Assembly (NCBI RefSeq): GCF_003918875.1 | Contig: NW_025766002.1 | Span: 7,254,001 to 7,318,000, forward strand | Length of the DNA: 64,000 nucleotides | Direction: 5' to 3' | Source: Haliotis rubra | Lineage: Eukaryota | Shown here: one piece after another, positions 4,788-60,636 of the stretch | Layout: each line of letters opens with the position of its first letter | Numbering within the stretch: position 1 is the first letter of the stretch | Notes under the pieces: model-generated | What the model was told of the DNA's origin: nothing | Database searches by the model: none | Seen by the model: only the letters and a program-made list of their open reading frames with translations | Translations under genes and position numbers: made by a program

Positions 4788-6059
4788 GACGTACGCGCAG
4801 TTTAGGTTGAAATTAACGTGTTTTCCACAACATTCAGAGGCTAGAGAATAATCAACCGTTCTGTAATTTTCAATATCAGGTGTGTGAACTTCAGGTGTCA
4901 AAAATCATTAAAAAAGTGAGTAATTTCACTGTGCATAAAGTGCACGTGCCACGCCGATAACTGACATCAAATGTCATGCAAAGTGCTTTGATAATATTTC
5001 TTTTAGAGTTATTTTTATAACTTTCCAAATGTCCTCTATTTTATGCAATGTTTCCTCATTCATGTTCCTCCTGAATGGACCACTTCAGTGGGGCTGCAGA
5101 TAGCACGTCTTCTTAGCGAAAGTCTGCAGTTCGATTCCAAGTCCGCCTTATACCAATAAAAGTGGCAAAGTCTTTTCAACATCTATAAGATATCTGTGCT
5201 CAGAGCAGATTGTAGAATTCCGGCTATATCCTGAGCATGCGTACATCAGTATCAAATAGTGATGGTACTCGTCACGTACAAATGCGAAGGTCGTTCTATT
5301 GTTCGACTGAAAAAAACACCAACACAGGAACATATGGTACAAGTCTAAATAGAGAATTGTATCCCATATACTTCTTATCACTGATGCTTCAAACGTGGAA
5401 ATGTTTTCCACATGTCTGTCTATCACAAAGAACTTGAATGTTGTAATCTTGATCAAACAATTTTTGATGATTTTGATCAGACAAAAAGACACTTTTTGAA
5501 ATCTGATAAAATGAGCATTGTTCGACTTGCAAAAAAGTTATGAAATATGAGTATAAATTGCTGGACCTGCACGAATATTGCACGATATAAAATTGACTAT
5601 ATGAAGGTTGAATCCAAACATATAATTCTGGGGTCCATTTACCACGTCTCGTCGTATTCTCAAGCAAATCTTGAAAGCATAACTTTAAGCCAACTTTCAT
5701 GGGGGGCAACATCCATATGCATTGTACATTACATGTCGTACTGAACACGTTGAATAGACTCTTAAGGCTAATTGTCATACGTACAAACAAAGCATTGTGA
5801 TCAAATGGTTCTCAGCACTATGATTTTGGTAGATATACACAGCGTTAACGCCAGAAACGCCGAAACAAATTCCAAAATAAGAGGCCAAATAGGGTTGAAG
5901 ACAATACGAATGGATCACTACGTGTATGCTAAAGAACAGGTGCTGTTCTAGCTGTAGCCACGTATATAAGTATATAGCTGTTTACGCTTCTAGTACTTAA
6001 CGTGTGCTAACTGGATATCTGTGGAGGAAGCTAGGTGTTGGGAGCGTGGAACAATTCAA

Positions 6060-7939
6060 GTCAGGGGGGACTTCTCGACACTCGATTGTGGGCATGCCAC
6101 CGTAATGTAAGAGTGCTTTCTGGACGGCGTAAAGCAGCAAACACAATCGTCGAGCGACAAACACAATAGTCAAGAGACAATCGTCAAGCGACAAACACAA
6201 TCGTCAAGCGACAAACACAATCGTCAAGAGACAATAACAATCGTCAAGCGACAAACACAATCGCCAAGAGACAATCACAATCGTCAAGCGACAAACACAA
6301 TCGTCAAGAGACAATAACAATGGTCAAGCGACAAATACAATCGTCAAGAGACAATCACAATCGTTAAGTGACAAATACAATCGTCAAGAGACAATAACAA
6401 TCGTCAAGCGACAAACACACCGGTCAATCGCCAACACAGTTGTCAATCAACAAGCACAGTCGTCAAGCTGGATGCACAATCATCAAACAACAAACACAAT
6501 CGCCAAGCAACACACACTCTGGCAATCGACAAACACACCGGTCAATCGACAAACACTCCGGTCAATCCACAAACACAGTCGTCAAGCAACAAAACACACT
6601 GGTCAATTGACAAACACTTCAGTCAATCAACAAACACAATCGTCAAGCAACAAAACACGATCTTCAATCGACAAACACCGATGGTTCCTGTAGTCAACAT
6701 TGATTTTGTAAGACGTTTCTTTCATAATATGTTAGCACTATATTATATATTTCCGCCGAATCTGATTCGTAGGATAATCGAGACTGACTTTTCTTTGGCG
6801 TATGTTTTAAGTTACGCAAAATGTCAGGGGTGACTTCTCAACATTTGATTATGGGCATGCCGCCGTAATGTAAGAGTACTTTCTGGACGGCGTAAAATAG
6901 GAAACACAATCGTCAAGCGACAAACAAAATCGTCAAGCGAAAATACAATCGTCAAGAGACAAATACAATCGTCAAGCAACAAACACAATCATCAAGAGAC
7001 AATCACAGTGGTCAAGAGACAAACACAATCGTCAAGAGACAATCACAATCGTCAAGCGACAGACACAATTGTCAAGAGACAATCAATCGTCAAGCGACAA
7101 TCACACGCGTCAAGAGACAATCACAATCGTCAAGAGACAAACACAATCGTCAAGAGACAATCACAATCGTCAAGCGACAGACACAATTGTCAAGAAACAA
7201 TCAATCGTCAAGCGACAATCACACGCGTCAAGAGACAATCAATCGTCAAGCGACAAACACAATCGTCAAGAGACAAACACAATCGTCAAGAGACAATCAC
7301 AATCGTCAAGCGACAGACACAATCGTCAAGAGACAATCAATCGTCAAGCGACAATCACACGCGTCAAGAGACAATCAATCGTCAAGCGACAAACACAATC
7401 GTCAAGAGACAAACATAATCGTCAAGAGACAATAAAAATCGTCAAGCGACAGACACAATCGTCAAGAGACAATCACACGCGTCAAGAGACAATCAATCGT
7501 CAAGCAACAAACACGATCGTCAAGAGACAATCACAATCGTCAAGTGACAAATACAATCGTCAAGAGGCAATCACAATCGTCAAGCAACAAACACACCGGT
7601 CAATCGCCAACACAGTTGTCAATCAACAAGCACAGTCGTCAAGCTGCATACACAATCATCAAACAACAAACACAATCGTCAAGCAACAATCACAATCACC
7701 ACGCAACAAACACTCTGGAAATCGACAAACACACCGGTCAATCGACAAACACTCCGGTCAATCCACAAACACAATCGTCAATCAATAAACACAATCGTCA
7801 AGCAACGAAACACACAAGATTTTGTAAGACGTTTCTTTCATAACATTTTAGCACTATATTATATTTTTCCGCCGAATCTGATTCGTAAGATAATCGAGAC
7901 TGACCTTTCTTTGGCGTTTGTTTTAATTTACGCAAAATG
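6060..7939. repeat. Two tandem modules (6060-6822, 6823-7939), each with conserved flanks and an internal ~20-bp minisatellite (cacaatcgtcaag[a/c]gacaa[a/t])
   Basis: Shared left flank gtcagggg.gacttctc...ctggacggcgtaaa and right flank gattttgtaagacgtttc...ttacgcaaaatg; arrays at ~6137-6680 and ~6901-7815. Confidence 0.95.
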
Positions 7940-8334
7940 CGATGGGCTGTTTTCATCTAACGCTTCAGAAACGTTTAAACTTTTTGTCCGTATCCGTTAT
8001 TTAGAGAACTATTCGTTGAGATAATAATTATTCACAATATATAATAAGGGCTATTTCTACAATAATCAAATAATAAATAAACTACAAAGAAGTAGAAAAG
8101 GAATATTACTTTCTCTTGATCTGTCTATCATTTGAATTATTAACTTTGTTTCACTTAAGTTCTATGCATGTACATCATTAAATAAATGTAAAAAGCCGTT
8201 AACATCGACAAATGAATATACTCTGAACCAATTAGCTATGTTTAATCATCATTCCATGTTAAAATGAAAACTTCGATGCCTTACAGTCCTGTAATAAACT
8301 GATAGTCAATAGCCAGTTTCTTTGACTGCAGTAG

Positions 8335-8488
8335 TAGACGGGGGAATATACGCATCACACCACACTACCCTTGAAAAATTCTAACAAAAGGTTTCTCAGT
8401 GGTTTTCACTTCTACTTGGTATGGTTATCAACAGAAAAAAAGTCTACCAAAATCCCACTGTGCAAAAGGGGTTAAAATCGGTTATTTC
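8335..8488 (+). repeat. Left TIR of Academ element
   Basis: tagacgggggaatat...aaaaattctaacaaaaggtttct...aacagaaaaaaagtctaccaaaatcc...tatttc matches the reverse complement of 14328-14471. Confidence 0.92.
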
Positions 8489-9639
8489 TATAACATGGTA
8501 TCAAGCAGCAGCCAACTACAAGCGATACAGATGAAGAACAAGTTTTTAGGTGAGTAGTATCCACTGCTTGTTTACATTGGAGACAACATATTTCCCAGCA
8601 TATTTACATGAAGTCTTCTTCCAGCCCATAATGTCAATTTAATGGAAATGGTAATTATTGAGATATGAATTTTGATGAGTTAGAATATACATCAGCTTAA
8701 ACTACTCCAAAAAATGGTGTATGATATTAAATGTATAAGTAAATCCATCTCAATGAATGTGCTGTCTGCTATGATGTCAATATGACCATCAGAAGCATAT
8801 CTACATCGAATAATGGGTAATCCATAATAAAACTTATGATAATAGTTGTTAAATACCAAACAAACAAGATTCACAACAATGTTCATTGAGGAAATTGTAA
8901 TATAAAGCTTAATTTCAAAGAAAAGTGCAGCAAATTTACAACACCTCCAGCCCCGCTGCTTGGAGCCAAGCTCCTCTGCAGTGTGTTTCACTTTCTCTGC
9001 ATGGAGTTTGACCTATAAAAAAAAACTGTTTTCTTGATGCCTTATCATACATTCTTAAATACCCAGATGAATTTTTAAATATGATTTTTTTTTTAAGTAG
9101 TACCTACTTTTTTATCATAATTTCCTATAAAGTTACATGTGAACCATTTTAAACAATTAGTTTTATATTGATTGATATAATTTCCACAAACATAAAACAC
9201 TTAAGTGCCCTGATTAAGAAAATGAATCTGAATTTTAATGTTTTTTCAAATAAAATATAATGCAAAAATCCTATTTTGATCATGATATTTTAGATTTATA
9301 GTAATGAATGAACATGAAATATTTAAGTGCTTTGCCTAATAAAATTCAATTGCATGAATATAAGATCTTGCTATTTAATTTGGATTTTTTGAACAAATAA
9401 CTATCTAAAGCATTGACATATGAATAGGTATGAAAATGTTATTATCTCTCTACATATATTTTTTGGTTATAATAAAACTTAAGTTTAATGTTGTCTTATG
9501 ATGTTCCAATATACTAGTATTAGCAAAAAACTTTGAAATCGAGGAAAAATAAAAATGTTTTATAGGAAATAAATATTACCATCTTTTCTCTATATAAATG
9601 CCAGTGTGAATTGTACCACTGTTTCATCATTTGTTTCAG

Positions 9640-12600
9640 ACCACAGTTGGAGAACACTTATTCAAGTGTCAGTTATGTCTGAAAAGACTTGACAATGGCC
9701 GTGACATTGTGAATATTCGTCAGAAGGGAGCCGATGGTATCAACGCTGCTAGTGCTCAGAGAGGTGATGACATTAGTGTGGAAGCAGGATGCAAGGTGCA
9801 CTTGCACTGTCGCAAACAGTATATCAATCAGCATGATATTGAAAATCAGAAGAAGAAACAAGAGACACAAAAACCCCCTTTGAAGCGAAGTTCTCGTGTT
9901 TTGAAGGATACTTTCAATAGTAATTCCGACTGTATATTTTGTGGTAACACAGTTTCCTTGCGTAGTCCAGATTTCAGCTACGTTAAGACTTTCAACTTCG
10001 CAAAATCAATACTAGATTGTTGCAAAAAAAGATGTGATGATTGGTCTCTTGCAGTGAAAGGACGCATTCAGTACTATGGAGGAGATCTGCATGCAGCCGA
10101 TTGCATCTATCATCATCAGTGCAGTGTACACTTCCGTAATGGCAGTGATGTACCAGTGAAATTCCGTGATGTCCCTAGAACTAAAACACCTGGGCGTCCT
10201 AAAGACAGTGATCAAGAGCAGGCTTTTGCTAAAATGTGTTTGTATCTCGAGGACAATGATGAGGAACAGATGACTATTACATACCTTCGGGAAAGAATGA
10301 GGAAGTATCTGATGGGTGAAAATTCTCTCCCCTACACCAACTCCCATTTGAAGAACAAACTGAAGGAACGCTATGGGGACTCTATCTATATAGCTGACAG
10401 AGAAGGACTAAGTGACATTATCACATTCAGGGAGAAAACATCTAATATCCTCCAAGCATATTACAAAAATGCAGAACGTGAAGGTGACGAGGAAACACAA
10501 AAGAAGGCCATAATTGCGACCGCTGCAAGATTGATCAAGAGTGACATTAAAACAGATGTACCAACTTCTACTGATTGCTATCCAAAGTCAGAAGAACTTG
10601 GACTTGATTCTGCACTGTCATTCCTTCCAGATACACTACAGAACTTGCTCAACTGTCTGTTTGTTGGAAAGAACAAATCAAGAAAAGTTGCTATTATTGG
10701 CCAAGCCATAATACAGGCAGTCAGACCAAGGGCTGTTATTGCACCTCTCCAGATTGGCCTCGGGGTACAAGTGCATCACCTTTATCGCTCAAAATTCCTT
10801 GTGGAAACATTGTCTTGCATGGGGTACAGTTCATCATACAGGGAAGTATTACGCTTTGAAAAAAATGCTGCAAGTTGTGTCACACCCGACTTGCTGCTTG
10901 AAGAGCAGGATGTGCCAGACATATCAGTATTGTTTGCCTGTGACAATGTTGATCACAACACCATTACCATCGATGGGAAAGGTACCTTTCATGGAATGGG
11001 CATGATAGCTGCAATGACTCCAGGTGGAAAATCATGTCATCTGGTAACAAGGCAAAGAACATCAGAACTGAACATTGCAAGAATGTCAAAAAATTGATAT
11101 TAAAGAATACAGATTCACCAGCCATGTTCTTCACAAGGTTAAGTTCAAACACCTCCCTTGTTTTCAGGCCTGTGACAGAATGGTTGATATTTTATGGGAA
11201 CTATCCTTCAGTTTCAAGCAGACAGTTCCGAATTGGCAGGGGATGATGCACATCCTTCATCAAAAACAGAAACATCCCGGTGTGTCCTCTATAGTCTATC
11301 TGCCCATGATTGATATGTATCCAGGTGACAAGTCATGCATTCTGTCAACGTTGGAATACCTGACCAGCCTATCCTTCAGACACAATATCTTTCCAGTGGT
11401 AACATTCGACCAGCCCTTGTATTGGAAAGCATCCGAGGTCATTCAAGCTGCACCAGGGGAATAGCCCTTTGAAGAGTATCATACTTAGGCTAGGTACTTT
11501 CCACATGTTCATGAATCTACTTGGAGCAATAGGCACACTGATGGTTGGGTCAGGTCTGAAAAACATTCTGGAAATAGTGTATGGTGAAAATGCCGTGGTT
11601 CATATGATGTCTGGCAAGGCTGTTCAAAGGGCATTTCGTGGGCACCTTCTAGTAGACAAATGTCTCCACCAAATGATCTTGAAATCGGCAGTGGAAGATA
11701 ACCCAGATCTTGCAAACCATGTGCTTGAAATTGAGAAAGTTTATTCCTCCTTGTTAAAGGGAGACAAACAAATTGAAGAACTCAGACAATCAGTGTCCTT
11801 CATTCAAGTGATCAATGAACTTGACAAAAAGAAGTCCAGACTTAGTGCAGACTCCAAAACAAGCCAGTTGTGGATAGGATATCAGAAGATGCTTGTCACG
11901 GCTCGAGAACTGATCAAAGCTGATCGCACTGGATCCTGGGATGATCATCTCTGTGCTATAGCTAATGCATTGCCAATATTTGCTGCAGCTGGACATTACA
12001 ACTACCTAAAGTCGGCTTACCTCTATAGTCAAGATATGGCTGAGCTGGACACCAGAAACCCAGAAGTTTTTTAAGAAGTTTCAAGATGGTTTCCATGTGA
12101 TCCGAAGAACAAACCAGTTTTGGGCAGGCCTCAGTAGTGATCTAGTCATCGAACAAACACTAATGAGATCAATAAAAAAGCACAGGAGGCTTGACCCATG
12201 GCAGTAAGATGACAGAAGAACAGCGAACACTATGGACAATGTCAGCACCCATTACCTCTGAGTTGAACATTGCCATGCAAGACTTCAATGAACTCACATA
12301 CTCCACAAGTGAGCAACATAAAGAAGCCAGTGTCGCCAGGATTGAGAGAGACGCTTCTGATCTGTTGAAGATACATTCCAAACTCTCTTCTTGCTCTCCT
12401 TTCACCTCAGACCCAGCGTTGAGAAATATCATCAATGGTATCGTTGCAAACGAGGATGCAAATGTTCATGAATATGACTCAATAGGGAAAAATATTATTG
12501 ACAAAATGGTTGGACAGCCTGTATATTCTTTCTCCATCAAAAGGAAAGAGAAAGCCAAGACCTTGGGAAATTCTGCTGCTGTCCAGGTTGCTCCTGACAG

Positions 12601-14052
12601 AACAATGGATCCCAATTTGCTGTTTCAACGATTCCTGGTGGTGTCAAGAACAGGGGATTTGGCATTTGAAGAAGTGCTGAAATATGAGTTAAGTCCATAC
12701 CCACCATCTCTGTTTGAGGACAATAAGATTATGAGAAAGGCAGACAAACCTCAACTAGCCGAAGCTGTCAATGATCACTGTAAAAAGATAGCAAGATGTG
12801 ATCACACATCAGATGTCATCCCACAGACTGAAAAGTATGTGCTAGATGGAGGCTCCTTGCTACACAAGCTAAAGTGGAACAACAGTGACACTTACGGGAA
12901 AATTGCCAAGGGATATGGAGATTTCACAACAAGGCACTATGGGATGGCAACTATTGTTTTTGATGGGTATGGGACTGGCCCTTCAATAAAGGATAACACA
13001 CACCAACGGCGGGGACAAAAAAACAGCTTCCGGACTGTTAACTTTACACATGAAACTGAATTTGAAGGGAAGAAGGAAGAGTTCCTATCCATAGACAAAA
13101 ACAAACAAGGTTTAATCAACTTGATAAGTGGGAAACTTAAGGAAGCTGGATGTAAAGTCATTCAGGCACATGGAGATGCAGATGTTGACATCGCAAAGAC
13201 TGCAGTAAACAGTGCAAAGACCCATTCTACCACACTGATCGGAGAGGACACTGACTTATTGATTCTTGTGCTGCATTACTGTATAGCAGGTGGGAATTCA
13301 CTCTATTTCAGATCAGACAATTCTTCAAAAGTCAGTCTGAAAGTGTACAACATCAACTGGATGAAGCAACTTCTTGGAAATAAGCTGTGCACCCAACTGT
13401 TATTTCTGCACTCATTTACAGGCTGTGATTCCACGTCTCGGATTTATGGCATTGGGAAAAAATCAGTGTTCCAGAAACTTGTCAAAGGTGATCAAGCCCT
13501 CCAGCTGTGTGCAGATACTTTCACTGCAAAAGAGGTAGAACAAGCAAAGATAGAGGAAACCGGTCGCCAGGCCATGGTGATCCTATTTGGTGGGAGAGAA
13601 GATGTTCCCTGGCTGCATTGCGTTACAGTGTATTCGCAAAGAAGGTTGTGGCTGCTAAATCTTTTGTTACACCTGAACGCCTTCCCCCAACGGAATCAGC
13701 CACCAAGTTTCACTGTCTGCGTGCCTATTATCAGGTCATGGTTTGGATGGACATGCAAACTAACCTCGATCCATTGCAATGGGGTTGGAAACTTGAAGAC
13801 AACCACTTTGTTCCCATCATGACATCACTAAATGCTGCTCCAGACAGTCTTATCAAGATCATACATTGTAACTGCACAACTAGTTGCAGTTCCGCACGCT
13901 GCAGCTGCAGAAAGAATGGACTTCAATGCACGACTGCCTGTGGACTGTGCCAAGTGACATGTTGTGACAATCCAGTCAATGAACCCTCAAAAGAAGTGGA
14001 GGATAGTGATGAGGACAATAATGACAATGATGAGGACAAAGATGAGGACTAA
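9640..14052 (+). CDS. Academ transposase polyprotein (~1,470 aa when joined): N-terminal C2HC-like motifs, DDE-type transposase, XPG/FEN1-like nuclease, C-terminal Cys-rich (CXC/Cys8) finger; five 1-nt frameshifts as assembled
   Basis: Joins ORFs 9631-11097, 11075-11464, 11469-12074, an unlisted segment (KKFQDGFHVIRRTNQFWAGLSSDLVIEQTLMRSIK), 12191-13822 and 13507-14052. Motifs: ACDNVD, VTFDQPL, LGTFH, SDLVIEQ; nuclease VLDGG..IVFDGY..GDAD..GEDTDLL..HSFTGCDSTS..GIGKK (H3TH); LPPT..WGW; CNCTTSC..CSC..CTTAC..C..CCDN. Confidence 0.85.
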
Positions 14053-14327
14053 ATAGTGTCCTTGGTAAAAACCTTGTTATGGAACATTATCCTAAAATTG
14101 TTTTTTTAGATGATATTCTTCTACTTAAAATGTATACCAATGGCAACATTCCTATGGATAATACTGACTTTCAGATTTCCACAAGTCAAATCCTACATAT
14201 TTTGTCACCAGTTGTTTGGTCATCCTTCAAAACCATAGATAACAACCAAAAACTATGCTTTGGACTCAATTATTGACAAAGGTATAGTGATTCTGGTGAT
14301 TGGAAAGTCCCAATGGCGGCCATCTTG

Positions 14328-14471
14328 GAAATACCCGTTTTTACCCATAATGCACGGTTGGATTTTGGTAGACTTTTTTTCTGTTATAAAGCATACCTGG
14401 TAGGAGACAACGTCACCAAGAAACCTTTTGTTATAATTTTTTTTAGGTTACCTGCCATATTCACCCGACTA
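14328..14471 (-). repeat. Right TIR of Academ element
   Basis: Reverse complement tagtcgggtgaatat...aaaaattataacaaaaggtttct...aacagaaaaaaagtctaccaaaatcc...tatttc. Confidence 0.92.
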
Positions 14472-15549
14472 TAGTATTTGGCCTTTAATGTACGTTCTAA
14501 GTTATGCAATACTTTGCTAATGTTTTAAGTTTACCGAGAGTTTTCCAGAAGTGTTACAGTTGCTGTCACAGTAAGGCGATCATGCCAATGAGATTGTCAT
14601 TTCAGTTCAATATTAGAATAATGGGTTTACATATTTCAATTATATGGAGAATCGAACCAGGGTTTGAGGTGTAACGAGGAAACCCGGTACCCACCGCCCC
14701 AGTCAGAAGGAAATATACCCTTACCTTGATGTCAGTCGTTTCTACGTGAAGGACAGCAGTAATGTGGAGATAGTTGCTATTTAAACACACTACTTAATTG
14801 ATTAATGAGAATAAAATGTCTTCTAAACATCACACGATTGCCAAATGTAGAGATAACCGCTCTTATAATACGTGCAATTATAAACAACTATCACAATTCT
14901 AGATATTAACTTGTACGAATTCACTCCAATATGTTTTGATATTGCGGACACCACAGCAAGTTATCCATGATAAGCATATGGAATGTGCGAAAAGTTAACT
15001 AATGAATATATGCATACATAATTTAATGATAAAACTGCAGCGTTTGCAAAGTAACACTGGATGAAGAGACCGTGAAGTTATAATTATACTCTTCCACCCC
15101 CCCAACCCCCAAGAAGAAGAATATATTGCGTTAGTTTAAGAGCAATTAGTTCATGTAATTTCGATGGTAAAAAAACAGGGGGGGGGGATTCACACGTCTA
15201 TAGACAAAGAGTTCTCCAACACAACACCAACACCTTTATTGTTGTGTTTCCGTTTACTTGAGTCCACAAGATGGCGTGTAAGTATTTCTTCAAACGCTTC
15301 TAAAACAAGCGAAAAAGTTAAAATTGCCGCGCTTTGGCTGTTTACAATCAAACATAGATGACGTTTTAAAAAGAAATAGTATACTTGTATTGTTTTTGCC
15401 GCAGCTACATGAGTCCAAGATTCTCAAAATCATCTATGCGTTTCTTTTTTTTAAGAGCGTAACTGTTAGATGCGATATGGAAGTACTTTATCACAAGTAT
15501 GAATACTGTAAATGTTTGTAGCTTAACGACTCGCTATTATCTATTTCCG

Positions 15550-20600: not shown

Positions 20601-21903
20601 GTGATGCTGTCTCATGCATATTAATGTCAACATGTGTATACCTCTTATTCGCACAACAAAATAAACAAACTATGCGTTGATAAACCAAAACGAAATGCTC
20701 TGAGAAAAATATATAAGTAGACATCTTTGTAAAACCTATACGATAAACATGAATGCATGTACCTTCAATCATCACAGATGTAGAAAGGGGTTGTAAGAAC
20801 CCAAAAAATCAATCTGAAATCTGTTTAGCCAGATTTGTGAACATCAGACAGTGTTTACACCAAGTGTTCACAAATAACTTAAAGTTACCTGTGAGTAATA
20901 GCAGCTCTGGGAAGGAGAGCATTGTCTGTCATTGTAGCGGAATGAGTCGACCCCGTTCCTCCAAGCGTTAAAGCCTCTATTCATGAACTCTTCCTCCGAT
21001 CGGGACGACTGCTCAATGTAGAGGTTCTCGCCGAAGTCAGGTCTTGATGAATATCTGAACTCACATCTGTTTGCATATCTCTGGGCTTCTCTTGCTAATT
21101 CTTCGTTCCATCTCTGCAACAAACAGTATTTAAGCTTAAGAAGCAATTTGATTTATCTACGAGACCAATGCCAATATGTCTAAATGCTTACAAGATTGTA
21201 GTTGGGCTTATAATTTCGTACAACAGTATACATTTGATAATTGACTTGAAATATAACAAATGCGAAAAGAATGCACAGCAAGTAATATGTTCTTGTATTG
21301 ACAAAATTAAAAAACTGCTATTTTGTTTGACAACATGTCTCCAAATGTTTCCGTTGTGGTAATTGGTACAGTTCATTAATTTCCTTTCAGGAAGTGCATG
21401 GAAATTCCATCTCATTGTTTAATGCAGACATTCAGTTTGTGTCTACTTAACATAAAGGGAACACTATAACCTCTTATCTCTCCGTCCAACACTCTGTTAG
21501 TTCAAGCAGCATCCACATNNNNNNNNNNNNNNNNNNNNNNNNNNNNNNNNNNNNNNNNNNNNNNNNNNNNNNNNNNNNNNNNNNNNNNNNNNNNNNNNNN
21601 NNNNNNNNNNNNNNNNNNNNNNNNNNNNNNNNNNNNNNNNNNNNNNNNNNNNNNNNNNNNNNNNNNNNNNNNNNNNNNNNNNNNNNNNNNNNNNNNNNNN
21701 NNNNNNNNNNNNNNNNNNNNNNAGTTTCAACTACTCACGAGAAAGGGATAGCTTTCCTCTCCGTACTCATTAGGGAACTCTCCCTCATCCATCATCTGGC
21801 GTCCCTCGTTGTGAAGTTGAAGCATGATGTTCTGATATTCTGGCATCATTACATTCGCCATGGAGACGCCCAAGACGCCCAGAAAAAGTACGGTCCACAT
21901 CAT
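17641..21903 (-). CDS. Secreted CAP (SCP/PR-1/CRISP-domain) protein, copy 1, 181 aa
   Basis: Exons 21903-21739, 21113-20889, 18809-18697, 18191-18157, 17648-17641, all GT-AG with compatible phases 0,0,2,1. MMWTVLFLGVLGVSMA signal; HNEGR; LRWNEELAREAQRYANRC; GENLY; CYYSQVNWEDTREFGCA; FLVCYYEPRGNW; ends EAYEPAK*. AATAAA at 17586-17581. Confidence 0.9.
19721..19875 (-). mobile_element. tRNA-derived SINE, family A, in CAP copy 1 intron
   Basis: (gagt)n tail plus gcttttagcaatattccagcaatatcac...; flanked on both sides by acttccactttga (candidate TSD). Confidence 0.8.
20079..20434 (+). mobile_element. Young tRNA-derived SINE, family C (Meta/MESC-like core), 9-bp TSD
   Basis: A/B boxes tggtgtagttgttagagc / gggttcgatgccc; core gtcataccaaaagacgttaaaatatggtac..ccctgcctggcgctcggcatta; (tcacc)n tail; TSD ctgacatat at 20070-20078 and 20435-20443; empty site in copy 2 near 34158. 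Confidence 0.85.
21519..21722. other. Assembly gap (N run) in CAP copy 1 intron
   Basis: Run of n. Confidence 1.
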
Positions 21904-52678: not shown

Positions 52679-52878
52679 NNNNNNNNNNNNNNNNNNNNNN
52701 NNNNNNNNNNNNNNNNNNNNNNNNNNNNNNNNNNNNNNNNNNNNNNNNNNNNNNNNNNNNNNNNNNNNNNNNNNNNNNNNNNNNNNNNNNNNNNNNNNNN
52801 NNNNNNNNNNNNNNNNNNNNNNNNNNNNNNNNNNNNNNNNNNNNNNNNNNNNNNNNNNNNNNNNNNNNNNNNNNNNNN
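52679..52878. other. Assembly gap (N run)
   Basis: Run of n. Confidence 1.
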
Positions 52879-60507: not shown

Positions 60508-60636
60508 NNNNNNNNNNNNNNNNNNNNNNNNNNNNNNNNNNNNNNNNNNNNNNNNNNNNNNNNNNNNNNNNNNNNNNNNNNNNNNNNNNNNNNNNNNNNN
60601 NNNNNNNNNNNNNNNNNNNNNNNNNNNNNNNNNNNN
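60508..60636. other. Assembly gap (N run)
   Basis: Run of n. Confidence 1.

What the first reader, a model, noticed from the sequence alone, without database searches (positions are those of the whole stretch)
8335..14471. Apparently intact AcademX transposon whose only lesions are single-base indels in homopolymer runs
Both TIRs, the TAG TSD and ~4.4 kb of coding sequence are present with no in-frame stop once five 1-nt shifts are corrected: +1 in A6 (11088-11093), G4 (11456-11459), T6 (12067-12072) and A6 (12174-12179), and -1 near 13592-13606. Homopolymer indels without nonsense changes are typical of sequencing error, so this may be a functional autonomous element. Academ is a poorly studied superfamily, and to my knowledge the role of the fused XPG/FEN1-like nuclease (acidic motifs DGG, FDGY, DAD, EDTD, GCD all retained here) is unresolved.
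Basis: partly seen in the sequence, partly recalled or inferred. Interest (0 to 1): 0.7.

Follow-up and report, generated by a model that had tools for sequence, protein, structure and literature searches.

The report
Young AcademX-type DNA transposon copy
This is one copy of a small, recently active family of cut-and-paste DNA transposons. Its large protein joins a DDE transposase to a FEN1/XPG-like nuclease, and most of its five reading-frame breaks look like assembly errors, though that cannot be proven for this copy.

Summary
Window 8335-14471 is a complete 6,137-bp transposon, delimited by six full-length copies elsewhere in the genome. It has imperfect ~150-bp TIRs. The 3-bp TAG duplication lies just outside the stated coordinates (8332-8334, 14472-14474). 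Six stop-free ORF pieces separated by the five stated 1-nt shifts map colinearly onto an intact 1,445-aa homologue.

Structure prediction supports a DDE transposase core (closest: P element transposase, Z 13.5) and a C-terminal FEN1/XPG-fold nuclease (Z ~12). All candidate catalytic residues are invariant across homologues. This architecture plus 3-bp TSDs fits AcademX, but no Repbase comparison was possible.

The "sequencing error" reading is partly supported.
- **For:** at all five sites the window differs from most copies. Copies differ by 20-75 small indels, most in homopolymer runs, often recurring at the same runs. Short-read contigs carry only the frame-preserving state.
- **Against:** those contigs collapse the family, so they say nothing about this copy. 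The G4 insertion at 11456 is shared with the sister copy and may be real.

Shared substitutions show purifying selection (p=2e-6), so the family was autonomous recently.

Verdict: new member of a known kind, moderate interest.

The parts
8332..8334 (.). Left target-site duplication TAG
   Evidence: Direct repeat of 14472-14474. Other copies carry ATA, CTT, AAT, ATT, TAT and TAG at the same position.
8335..14471 (+). Whole transposon copy, 6,137 bp
   Evidence: Boundaries are shared by six full-length copies at 0.8-1.5% substitutions, each with unrelated flanks.
8335..8482 (+). Left terminal inverted repeat (terminal 15 bp plus subterminal arm)
14333..14471 (-). Right terminal inverted repeat
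   Evidence: A run X1 contig spans the right junction 14444-14650 without any difference.
8374..8394 (+). Conserved TIR block 1 (AAATT..AACAAAAGGTTT); mirrored at 14421-14441. Candidate transposase-binding site.
   Evidence: Identical in both ends of this element and in both ends of a homologous element from another sample, L061. The binding role is inferred.
8438..8454 (+). Conserved TIR block 2 (AAAAGTyTACCrAAATC); mirrored at 14361-14377
   Evidence: The binding role is inferred.
8495..8549 (+). Predicted exon 1 (MVSSSSQLQAIQMKNKFL plus 1 nt)
   Evidence: ATG followed by the donor TAG|GTGAGT. Inferred; no RNA data.
8550..9646 (+). Predicted intron (GT..AG, AT-rich)
   Evidence: Only the acceptor at 9646 restores the frame of the long ORF. 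Inferred. The joined exons were not searched.
9647..14052 (+). Predicted exon 2: the rest of a ~1,485-codon ORF, broken by five 1-nt shifts; stop codon at 14050-14052
11088..11093 (+). Frameshift 1: A6 (other copies A5 or A4)
   Evidence: All short-read contigs are one base shorter here.
11456..11459 (+). Frameshift 2: G4 (other copies G3, except sister copy L007)
   Evidence: Possibly inherited and real.
12067..12072 (+). Frameshift 3: T6 (other copies T5; the non-sister copy L002 also has T6)
12174..12179 (+). Frameshift 4: A6 (other copies A5; L002 also has A6)
13593..13594 (+). Frameshift 5: one A is missing between these bases; not a homopolymer
   Evidence: Contigs in all four runs carry the A: as an insertion in X1, X3 and X4, and as loose ends in all four.
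10942..10953 (+). DNVD: first catalytic Asp candidates (codons 10942-10944 and 10951-10953) on strand beta-1 of the RNase H-like core
   Evidence: Invariant in 35 homologues, kept in the window, and located in the first strand of the model.
11408..11410 (+). Second catalytic Asp candidate (FDQ)
12151..12153 (+). Catalytic Glu candidate (IEQ)
   Evidence: Nearly invariant. Lies on the helix after the all-helical insertion domain. Kept in the window.
12743..13591 (+). FEN1/XPG-fold 5' nuclease domain. Acidic codons at 12845, 12962, 13175, 13181, 13247, 13253 and 13427.
   Evidence: Model residues 188-470 align to FEN1/Exo1/XRN1/GEN1/XPG with Z 10-12. Foldseek's top 50 hits are all from this superfamily. 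The acidic residues are invariant.
13867..13965 (+). C-terminal Cys-rich CXC-like motif
   Evidence: Conserved Cys pattern. Homologues give only sub-threshold TCR / preSET_CXC hits. Weak.
14472..14474 (.). Right target-site duplication TAG

Best explanation
Window 8335-14471 is one insertion of a small (about 17 ends of each kind), young family of cut-and-paste DNA transposons of the AcademX type. One gene (a short first exon, a ~1.1-kb intron, then a 4.4-kb exon) encodes a protein of about 1,485 aa. It has N-terminal Cys/His-rich regions, an RNase H-like DDE transposase core with an all-helical insertion domain, a FEN1/XPG-fold metal-dependent 5' nuclease, and a C-terminal CXC-like Cys cluster.

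Inferred mechanism: the transposase binds the two conserved sequence blocks in each ~150-bp TIR, cleaves and transfers the 3' ends, and inserts with a 3-bp stagger. The fused structure-specific nuclease probably processes the other (5') strand or flap at the ends or at the target.

The family was autonomous until very recently. In this copy, most of the five 1-nt frameshifts are consensus errors of a long-read assembly. One or two may be real; the prime suspect is the G4 at 11456.
For: Mobile element:
- Copies are identical in extent but have different flanks and different 3-bp TSDs.
- Two TIR blocks are conserved in an element from another sample whose protein is only ~45% identical.

Protein:
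- The six pieces are colinear with the intact 1,445-aa P0249.
- The family has 3,867 representative clusters at E<=1e-3, including many proteins of 1,418-1,565 aa.
- Core model: pLDDT 88.8, pTM 0.89. In an exhaustive search the best match is P element transposase 6p5a (Z 13.5, 289 residues), then Hermes (Z 9.2), then Tn5, integrases and RAG1.
- Nuclease model: Z 10-12 to FEN1/Exo1/XPG/GEN1/XRN1; best Foldseek hit Rad2, E 2e-5.
- Candidate catalytic residues are invariant and kept in the window: 20/20 invariant and 42/45 near-invariant positions.

Recent autonomy:
- Substitutions shared by two or more copies are 56% nonsynonymous against 79% expected (p=2e-6). Private substitutions are 78% nonsynonymous, which is neutral.

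Errors:
- At each of the five sites the window deviates from most copies.
- Pairs of copies differ by 48-93 substitutions but by 20-75 small indels. Most are in homopolymers and many recur at the same runs.
- Private indel load (1-25 per copy) is decoupled from private substitutions: L007 has 23 substitutions and 25 indels, L010 has 43 and 4.
- T6 and A6 are shared with a non-sister copy, which points to homoplasy.
- In four short-read runs the contigs show only the frame-preserving state at four of the five sites. At 12174 part of the depth in X3, X4 and X5 is unaccounted for or two bases shorter. No contig was reported with the window's A6.
Against: - The read evidence is not copy-specific. 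The Logan contigs are collapsed over about 16 copies (depth ~1,900 against ~120 in the flank). They also lack substitutions shared by L001, L005 and L007.
- G4 at 11456 is shared with L007, which shares three exclusive substitutions with the window copy, so inheritance is the simpler explanation.
- The lesion at 13593/4 is not in a homopolymer.
- Real slippage mutations also favour homopolymers. From 7 private and 7 lineage-shared substitutions, about one real indel is expected.
- No copy in the assembly has an uninterrupted ORF.
- No Pfam model, not even XPG_N or XPG_I, hits the protein, and no PDB sequence does.
- No RNA evidence exists for the gene model.
- No reference Academ sequence was available for direct comparison.
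Confidence: 0.68

Rival explanations
1. All five frameshifts are real mutations. The copy is a dead relic that could move only in trans, and the open frame after five corrections merely reflects its youth.
For: - G4 is shared with sister copy L007.
- L001 lies in a relatively clean part of the assembly, with only 2 strictly private indels.
- Every assembled copy is frameshifted, and several carry true nonsense substitutions.
- The contigs cannot exclude rare copy-specific states.
Against: - Five 1-nt indels against ~14 derived substitutions is about 3.5 times the ratio seen in the natural-looking copy L010 (43:4).
- Two of the five are shared with a non-sister copy.
- The same runs vary as A4/A5/A6 among copies.
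- Other copies reach a 1:1 indel-to-substitution ratio, which is not biological.
- There is no nonsense codon, and all invariant residues are kept.
Confidence: 0.12
2. The element is not Academ. It belongs to, or is an offshoot of, another DDE superfamily (for example P-like, given the structural match) or an undescribed one that independently acquired a FEN-like nuclease.
For: - The best structural match of the core is the P element transposase (Z 13.5).
- No sequence comparison with reference Academ proteins could be run.
- Kojima 2020 and Yuan & Wessler 2011 are not held.
- The only Pfam hint is a sub-threshold DUF6589 hit.
Against: - 3-bp TSDs fit AcademX, for which PMC10045372 states 3-4 bp and a nuclease. 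They do not fit P (8 bp by established knowledge).
- No THAP or Tnp_P_element Pfam hit.
- A transposase fused to an XPG-like nuclease is, from my own knowledge of Repbase descriptions, the defining architecture of AcademX.
Confidence: 0.1
3. It is a domesticated, host-co-opted transposase-nuclease gene rather than a mobile element.
For: There is purifying selection on shared substitutions, and homologues are annotated as host hypothetical proteins in many animals.
Against: - There are at least 12 near-identical copies at unrelated loci, each with TIRs and its own TSD.
- Private substitutions are neutral.
- Internal-deletion derivatives exist.
Confidence: 0.01

Closest known systems
AcademX lineage of the Academ superfamily (Kapitonov & Jurka 2010, Repbase Reports; Kojima 2020, Mob DNA 11:15)
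   Same: A large single protein combines a DDD/E transposase with a nuclease, and the element has TIRs and 3-4-bp TSDs. PMC10045372 states that AcademX makes 3-4-bp TSDs and encodes a nuclease. Here 7 of 9 copies have 3-bp TSDs and the nuclease has the FEN1/XPG fold.
   Different: It is a new family in this genome; the best database protein is only 73% identical over the nuclease half. Two copies have 5-bp and 10-bp TSDs. Sequence similarity to reference Academ entries could not be tested.
AcademH lineage (helicase-encoding Academ)
   Same: It is presumably the same transposase superfamily. Its 9-10-bp TSDs resemble the single 10-bp TSD of copy L005.
   Different: AcademH carries a helicase instead of the nuclease. 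No helicase domain is found here.
Drosophila P element transposase (PDB 6p5a) and hAT Hermes (8edg)
   Same: The RNase H-like DDE core is interrupted by a large helical insertion domain before the catalytic Glu. Z is 13.5 over 289 residues for P and 9.2 for Hermes.
   Different: There is no detectable sequence similarity or shared Pfam domain. The TSD is 3 bp rather than 8 bp. No THAP or BED finger was detected, and GTP binding was not examined.
FEN1 / XPG (Rad2) / Exo1 / GEN1 structure-specific 5' nucleases
   Same: The fold matches (Z 10-12, ~225 aligned residues). There are seven invariant acidic residues whose spacing (39, 71, 2, 22, 2, 58) is close to that of human FEN1 D34, D86, E158, E160, D179, D181, D233 (the FEN1 numbering is from established knowledge).
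   Different: The domain is fused to a transposase, falls below the detection limit of the Pfam XPG_N/XPG_I models and of a PDB profile search, and its substrate is unknown.
Tn7 TnsA/TnsB (functional analogy only)
   Same: A DDE enzyme for the 3' ends is paired with a second, unrelated nuclease that could cut the 5' strand. This is the inferred division of labour here.
   Different: TnsA is a restriction-enzyme-fold protein encoded separately. The two systems are not homologous, and the analogy is untested.

Membership tests
Academ superfamily, AcademX lineage | DDD/E transposase with an RNase H-like catalytic core | tested here: met
   AF2 model of the homologous core: pLDDT 88.8. It matches DDE transposases and integrases, Z up to 13.5. 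D, D and E are invariant or nearly so and are kept in the window.
Academ superfamily, AcademX lineage | XPG-like nuclease encoded in the same protein | tested here: met
   Met by fold only: Foldseek's top 50 hits are all FEN/XPG/Exo1/T5-exonuclease family and Z is 10-12. The acidic residues are invariant. The Pfam XPG models do not hit.
Academ superfamily, AcademX lineage | TSD of 3-4 bp (PMC10045372) | tested here: met
   Seven copies have 3-bp TSDs. The exceptions are 5 bp (L002) and 10 bp (L005).
Academ superfamily, AcademX lineage | Significant sequence similarity of the transposase to reference Academ transposases (Repbase; Yuan & Wessler alignment) | not testable with these tools
   No Repbase or Dfam library is available, and the key papers are not held.
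Academ superfamily, AcademX lineage | Terminal inverted repeats | tested here: met
P element superfamily | 8-bp TSD, THAP DNA-binding domain, Tnp_P_element Pfam domains | tested here: not met
   TSD is 3 bp. No Pfam hit at E<=1 on the pieces or on six full-length homologues. Only the fold of the core resembles P.
PIF/Harbinger (another superfamily with 3-bp TSDs) | DDE_Tnp_4 transposase of ~400 aa, a second Myb-like ORF, TWA target | tested here: not met
   No DDE_Tnp_4 hit. There is a single ~1,485-aa ORF. The TSDs are TAG, ATA, CTT, AAT, ATT and TAT.
FEN1/XPG (Rad2) protein family proper | Match to the XPG_N and XPG_I sequence models | tested here: not met
   No hit at E<=1 and no PDB profile hit at E<=10. 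The relationship is at fold and active-site-pattern level only.

The most novel reading that the evidence does not exclude
One AcademX family makes mostly 3-bp TSDs but also 5-bp and 10-bp ones. The 10-bp length is the one reported for helicase-encoding AcademH. So the DDE core itself may be able to attack the target with a ~10-bp stagger, and the fused FEN-like nuclease (by flap or 5'-strand processing) may set the final 3-bp outcome. If a naturally uninterrupted copy exists here, this would be a directly testable system for the unresolved role of the Academ accessory enzyme.
Probability: 0.12. Interest if true: 0.7.

Novelty: new member of a known kind. Interest (0 to 1): 0.38.

Why it matters
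To my knowledge, no Academ transposase has been characterised biochemically or structurally, and the job of its fused XPG-like nuclease is unknown.

A family with about 1% divergence, selection on its ORF and all catalytic residues kept is a realistic source of an active element. The models give concrete residues to mutate: D/D/E in a P-element-like core and seven acidic residues in a FEN-fold domain.

On the practical side, the finding illustrates that this assembly carries many homopolymer-length errors inside repeats. Frameshifted transposon genes in it should therefore not be scored as dead without accurate reads.

Tried and rejected
- **Pfam:** nothing for the five long ORF pieces at E<=1 except chance-level hits. 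Six full-length homologues gave only sub-threshold DUF6589 and CXC hits.
- **PDB profile search** with the 36-sequence nuclease alignment found nothing at E<=10.
- **Foldseek on the transposase core** gave no hit at E<=0.001. The exhaustive VIA search was needed.
- **Literature:** Kojima 2020 and Yuan & Wessler 2011 are not held. No held paper contains both 'Academ' and 'XPG'.
- **Reads:** no raw reads and no RNA holders were available, only Logan contigs. These cannot resolve single copies. I first took the 100% frame-preserving state in the contigs as strong support. I downgraded it after seeing that they also lack three-copy substitutions.
- **Gene conversion** between L001 and L002 around 12067-12174 has no haplotype support either way.
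- **TSD of the homologous element in L061** is not clean (ACC against TCC). This may be a chimeric contig.
- **Earlier findings** look-ups returned only this finding itself and an unrelated note.
- **Not attempted:** the read-through protein and the joined exon 1 + exon 2 product were never assembled or searched. The pieces were searched apart, and a natural intact homologue was folded instead.
Full report
**1. Observation**

- A search of the window's own genome (1.38 Gb, 2,855 contigs) with 8320-14490 found six full-length copies. It also found about a dozen truncated, internally deleted or older ones.
- BLAST of the loci shows that similarity starts at window 8335 and ends at 14471 in every full-length copy. 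The flanks are unrelated.
- The two ends are inverted repeats. The terminal 15 bp match at 13 of 15 positions. After a 9-nt indel, arms 8374-8482 and 14333-14441 are 79% complementary.

The TSD needs a small correction.
- TAG at 8335-8337 and CTA at 14469-14471 are inverted, not direct, and occur in all copies. They are therefore the element's own termini.
- The duplicated target is the TAG at 8332-8334 and 14472-14474.
- Other copies are flanked by ATA, CTT, AAT, ATT, TAT and TAG. One has a 5-bp repeat (CTTTG, L002) and one a 10-bp repeat (TGTGTCAACC, L005).

**2. Coding region**

- Translation gives six stop-free pieces in frames 1, 2, 0, 1, 2, 1.
- The pieces align in order and without overlap to a single uninterrupted 1,445-aa protein from another sample (P0249, 44-73% identity per piece). 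They are therefore parts of one gene.
- The long ORF has no in-frame ATG near its start.
- An ATG at 8495 followed by a strong donor (TAG|GTGAGT at 8549|8550) and the acceptor at 9646 would supply 18 codons and keep the frame.
- This splice is inferred.

**3. What the protein is**

No Pfam family hits any piece. Relatives are very numerous:
- 547 and 246 proteins in the two word-based searches.
- 3,867 representative clusters in the exhaustive search.
- Of the few that carry a name, all are unnamed or 'hypothetical'. They come from arthropods, molluscs, cnidarians, echinoderms, a hagfish, an eel and a frog.
- Many are 1,418-1,565 aa long.

Transposase core (folded from the intact homologue P0249:400-860 with 35 sequences):
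- Model quality is pLDDT 88.8 and pTM 0.89.
- The topology is beta1-beta2, helices, beta3-alpha-beta4-alpha-beta5, a ~190-residue all-helical insertion, and then a helix carrying the Glu.
- In an exhaustive comparison with 48,161 PDB chains, the best match is the Drosophila P element transposase (Z 13.5, 289 residues, 4.6 Å). Next come Hermes (Z 9.2), ISCth4, Tn5, retroviral integrases, RAG1 and Transib.
- DNVD and FDQ are invariant, and the Glu of IEQ is nearly invariant.
- The window keeps all 20 invariant and 42 of 45 near-invariant positions.

Nuclease half (folded from the window's own piece 12182-13591 with 36 sequences):
- Residues 190-470 are confident.
- All of Foldseek's top 50 hits are Rad2/XPG, FEN1, Exo1, GEN1, XRN1, T5 exonuclease or a plastid 5' exonuclease (best E 2e-5).
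- VIA-align gives Z 10-12 over about 225 residues, covering FEN1 residues 3-269.
Their spacing is that of FEN1.
It lies beyond the reach of the Pfam XPG models and of a PDB profile search.

C-terminal Cys cluster (13867-13965): it looks CXC-like, but homologues give only sub-threshold TCR/preSET_CXC hits.

**4. The five frameshifts**

Aligned to 13 other copies, the window deviates from the majority at each site.

| Site | Window | Other copies |
|---|---|---|
| 11088 | A6 | A5 in eight, A4 in four |
| 11456 | G4 | G3 (L007 also G4) |
| 12067 | T6 | T5 (L002 also T6, L005 T4) |
| 12174 | A6 | A5 (L002 also A6, two copies A4) |
| 13593/4 | A missing | A present in all others |

Evidence that the assembly is indel-noisy inside this repeat:
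- Pairs of copies differ by 48-93 substitutions but by 20-75 indel events. Nearly all are 1-2 nt, most are in homopolymers, and many recur at the same runs.
- The number of private indels per copy (1-25) does not follow the number of private substitutions. L006 has 24 substitutions and 21 indels, L007 has 23 and 25. L010 has a natural-looking 43 and 4.
- Every assembled copy is frameshifted.
- This is the signature of long-read consensus error in repeats that short reads could not polish.

The read data need care.
- Only Logan contigs of four short-read runs were available.
- At four of the five sites every contig in every run carries the frame-preserving state. At 12174 part of the depth in X3, X4 and X5 is unaccounted for or two bases shorter, but no contig was reported with the window's A6.
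- The contigs are collapsed over the family: depth is about 1,900 against about 120 for the flank in X1.
- They also lack substitutions that the window shares with L005 and L007 (9999, 10158, 11833, 11839, 13378 and 13537 are all 100% 'other').
- They therefore report the family majority, not this copy. What they do show is that the majority sequence, read by accurate chemistry, differs from the window by indels at these five sites, at one in-frame 3-nt site (13990), and at a few minor or unlisted ones. The dominant form of the family is therefore most likely open.

Copy genealogy adds nuance.
- The window copy's sisters are L007 (three exclusive shared substitutions) and then L005 (four more).
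- G4 at 11456 is shared with L007 only, so it may have been inherited from a frameshifted progenitor.
- T6 and A6 are shared with L002, which shares no exclusive substitution with the window. That fits recurrent error.

My estimates:
- About 85% that at least three of the five lesions are artefacts.
- About 45% that all five are, i.e. that this copy is truly uninterrupted.

**5. Was the family autonomous?**

- Among 12 young copies, substitutions carried by two or more copies are 56% nonsynonymous, against 79% expected from codon composition (p = 2e-6). These arose in lineages that went on to transpose.
- Private substitutions are 78% nonsynonymous, which is neutral.
- This is the classic pattern of a family whose propagating lineages needed a working protein.
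- With 0.8-1.5% pairwise substitutions (an upper bound, given the error) and distinct TSDs, activity was recent.
- Older copies (6-14% diverged) and internal-deletion derivatives also exist.
- Only about 17 left ends and 17 right ends were found, and no abundant MITE-like derivative.

**6. Mechanism**

Shown:
- TIRs.
- 3-bp TSDs.
- A DDE core and a FEN-fold domain with complete acidic sites.
- Two short TIR blocks (AACAAAAGGTTT and AAAAGTyTACCrAAATC, about 50 bp apart). They are identical in both ends of this element and in both ends of a related element from another sample.

Inferred:
- The blocks are transposase-binding sites.
- The DDE core cuts and joins the 3' ends with a 3-bp stagger.
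- The structure-specific nuclease handles the non-transferred 5' strand or flaps at the ends or the target. This is analogous in logic to TnsA beside TnsB.
- PMC10045372 notes that the TSD difference between AcademX (3-4 bp) and AcademH (9-10 bp) seems tied to their different accessory enzymes. The single 10-bp and single 5-bp TSDs in this nuclease-encoding family are therefore worth following up.

**7. Classification and novelty**

- Architecture, TSD length and TIRs match what is described for AcademX.
- The defining sequence comparison with reference Academ transposases could not be run. Repbase and Dfam are not available and the key papers are not held.
- P, hAT, PIF/Harbinger and CACTA memberships fail on TSD and/or domain tests.
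- I file it as a new family of a known kind.

The points of interest are practical:
- It is a candidate source of an active Academ element.
- There are confident structural models linking the core to the P/hAT-like group of DDE enzymes.
- There is TSD-length heterogeneity within the family.
- It is a cautionary example of homopolymer errors mimicking pseudogenisation.

Noticed in passing
L005 (G000:C2089:180750-186878) and L002 (G000:C2300:3240315-3246439): Two otherwise ordinary full-length copies are flanked by a perfect 10-bp direct repeat (TGTGTCAACC) and a 5-bp one (CTTTG) instead of the usual 3 bp. Ten bp is the TSD length reported for helicase-encoding AcademH.
   Followed up: partly
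window 6138-7814: There is a 20-bp minisatellite (unit CAAACACAATCGTCAAGCGA, about 83 copies, with 78- and 118-bp higher-order periods) about 520 bp upstream of the insertion. It explains the strong AT/GC skew of 6001-8000 and the spurious 239-aa ORF at 7069-7788.
   Followed up: partly
L008, L009, L011 (C2301, C532, C2157): These three copies form a subfamily. They share 14 exclusive substitutions, a 19-bp deletion at window-equivalent 11527-11545 (inside the transposase) and a ~76-80-bp insertion in the intron near 9024. The deletion is real and disabling, and it spread by transposition, so these copies were mobilised in trans.
   Followed up: partly
L018/L020 (G000:C2709:17019-19517): This is an internal-deletion derivative joining element positions ~1463 and ~4772 (about 3.3 kb of coding sequence lost). 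It is a non-autonomous copy. Other rearranged or older copies lie on C264, C557 and C2744.
   Followed up: no
window 10530-10628 and 12695-12782 (runs X4, X5): Contigs of the runs labelled organism B hold the family at 95-99% identity. They include forms that skip 97 bp (with CTA filler) and 86 bp (with AAGATAAC filler), so deletion variants exist in that sample. The single-copy flank 14501-14650 is not covered in those runs.
   Followed up: no
L061:466-5890 (Logan contig of SRR25760728): This is a homologous 5.4-kb element from another sample with an intact, intron-less 1,445-aa ORF. Its TIRs start with TAGAAG and share two sequence blocks with the window element. Its flanks (ACC / TCC) do not form a clean 3-bp TSD.
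   Followed up: partly
window 13990-13991: The window copy lacks 3 nt (one codon) in the acidic C-terminal tail, relative to nine of the eleven other young copies and to short-read contigs in three of the four runs. The difference is in frame.
   Followed up: yes
window 21519-21722, 52679-52878, 60508-60636: Three runs of N (204, 200 and 129 bases) are present. They were left untouched.
   Followed up: no
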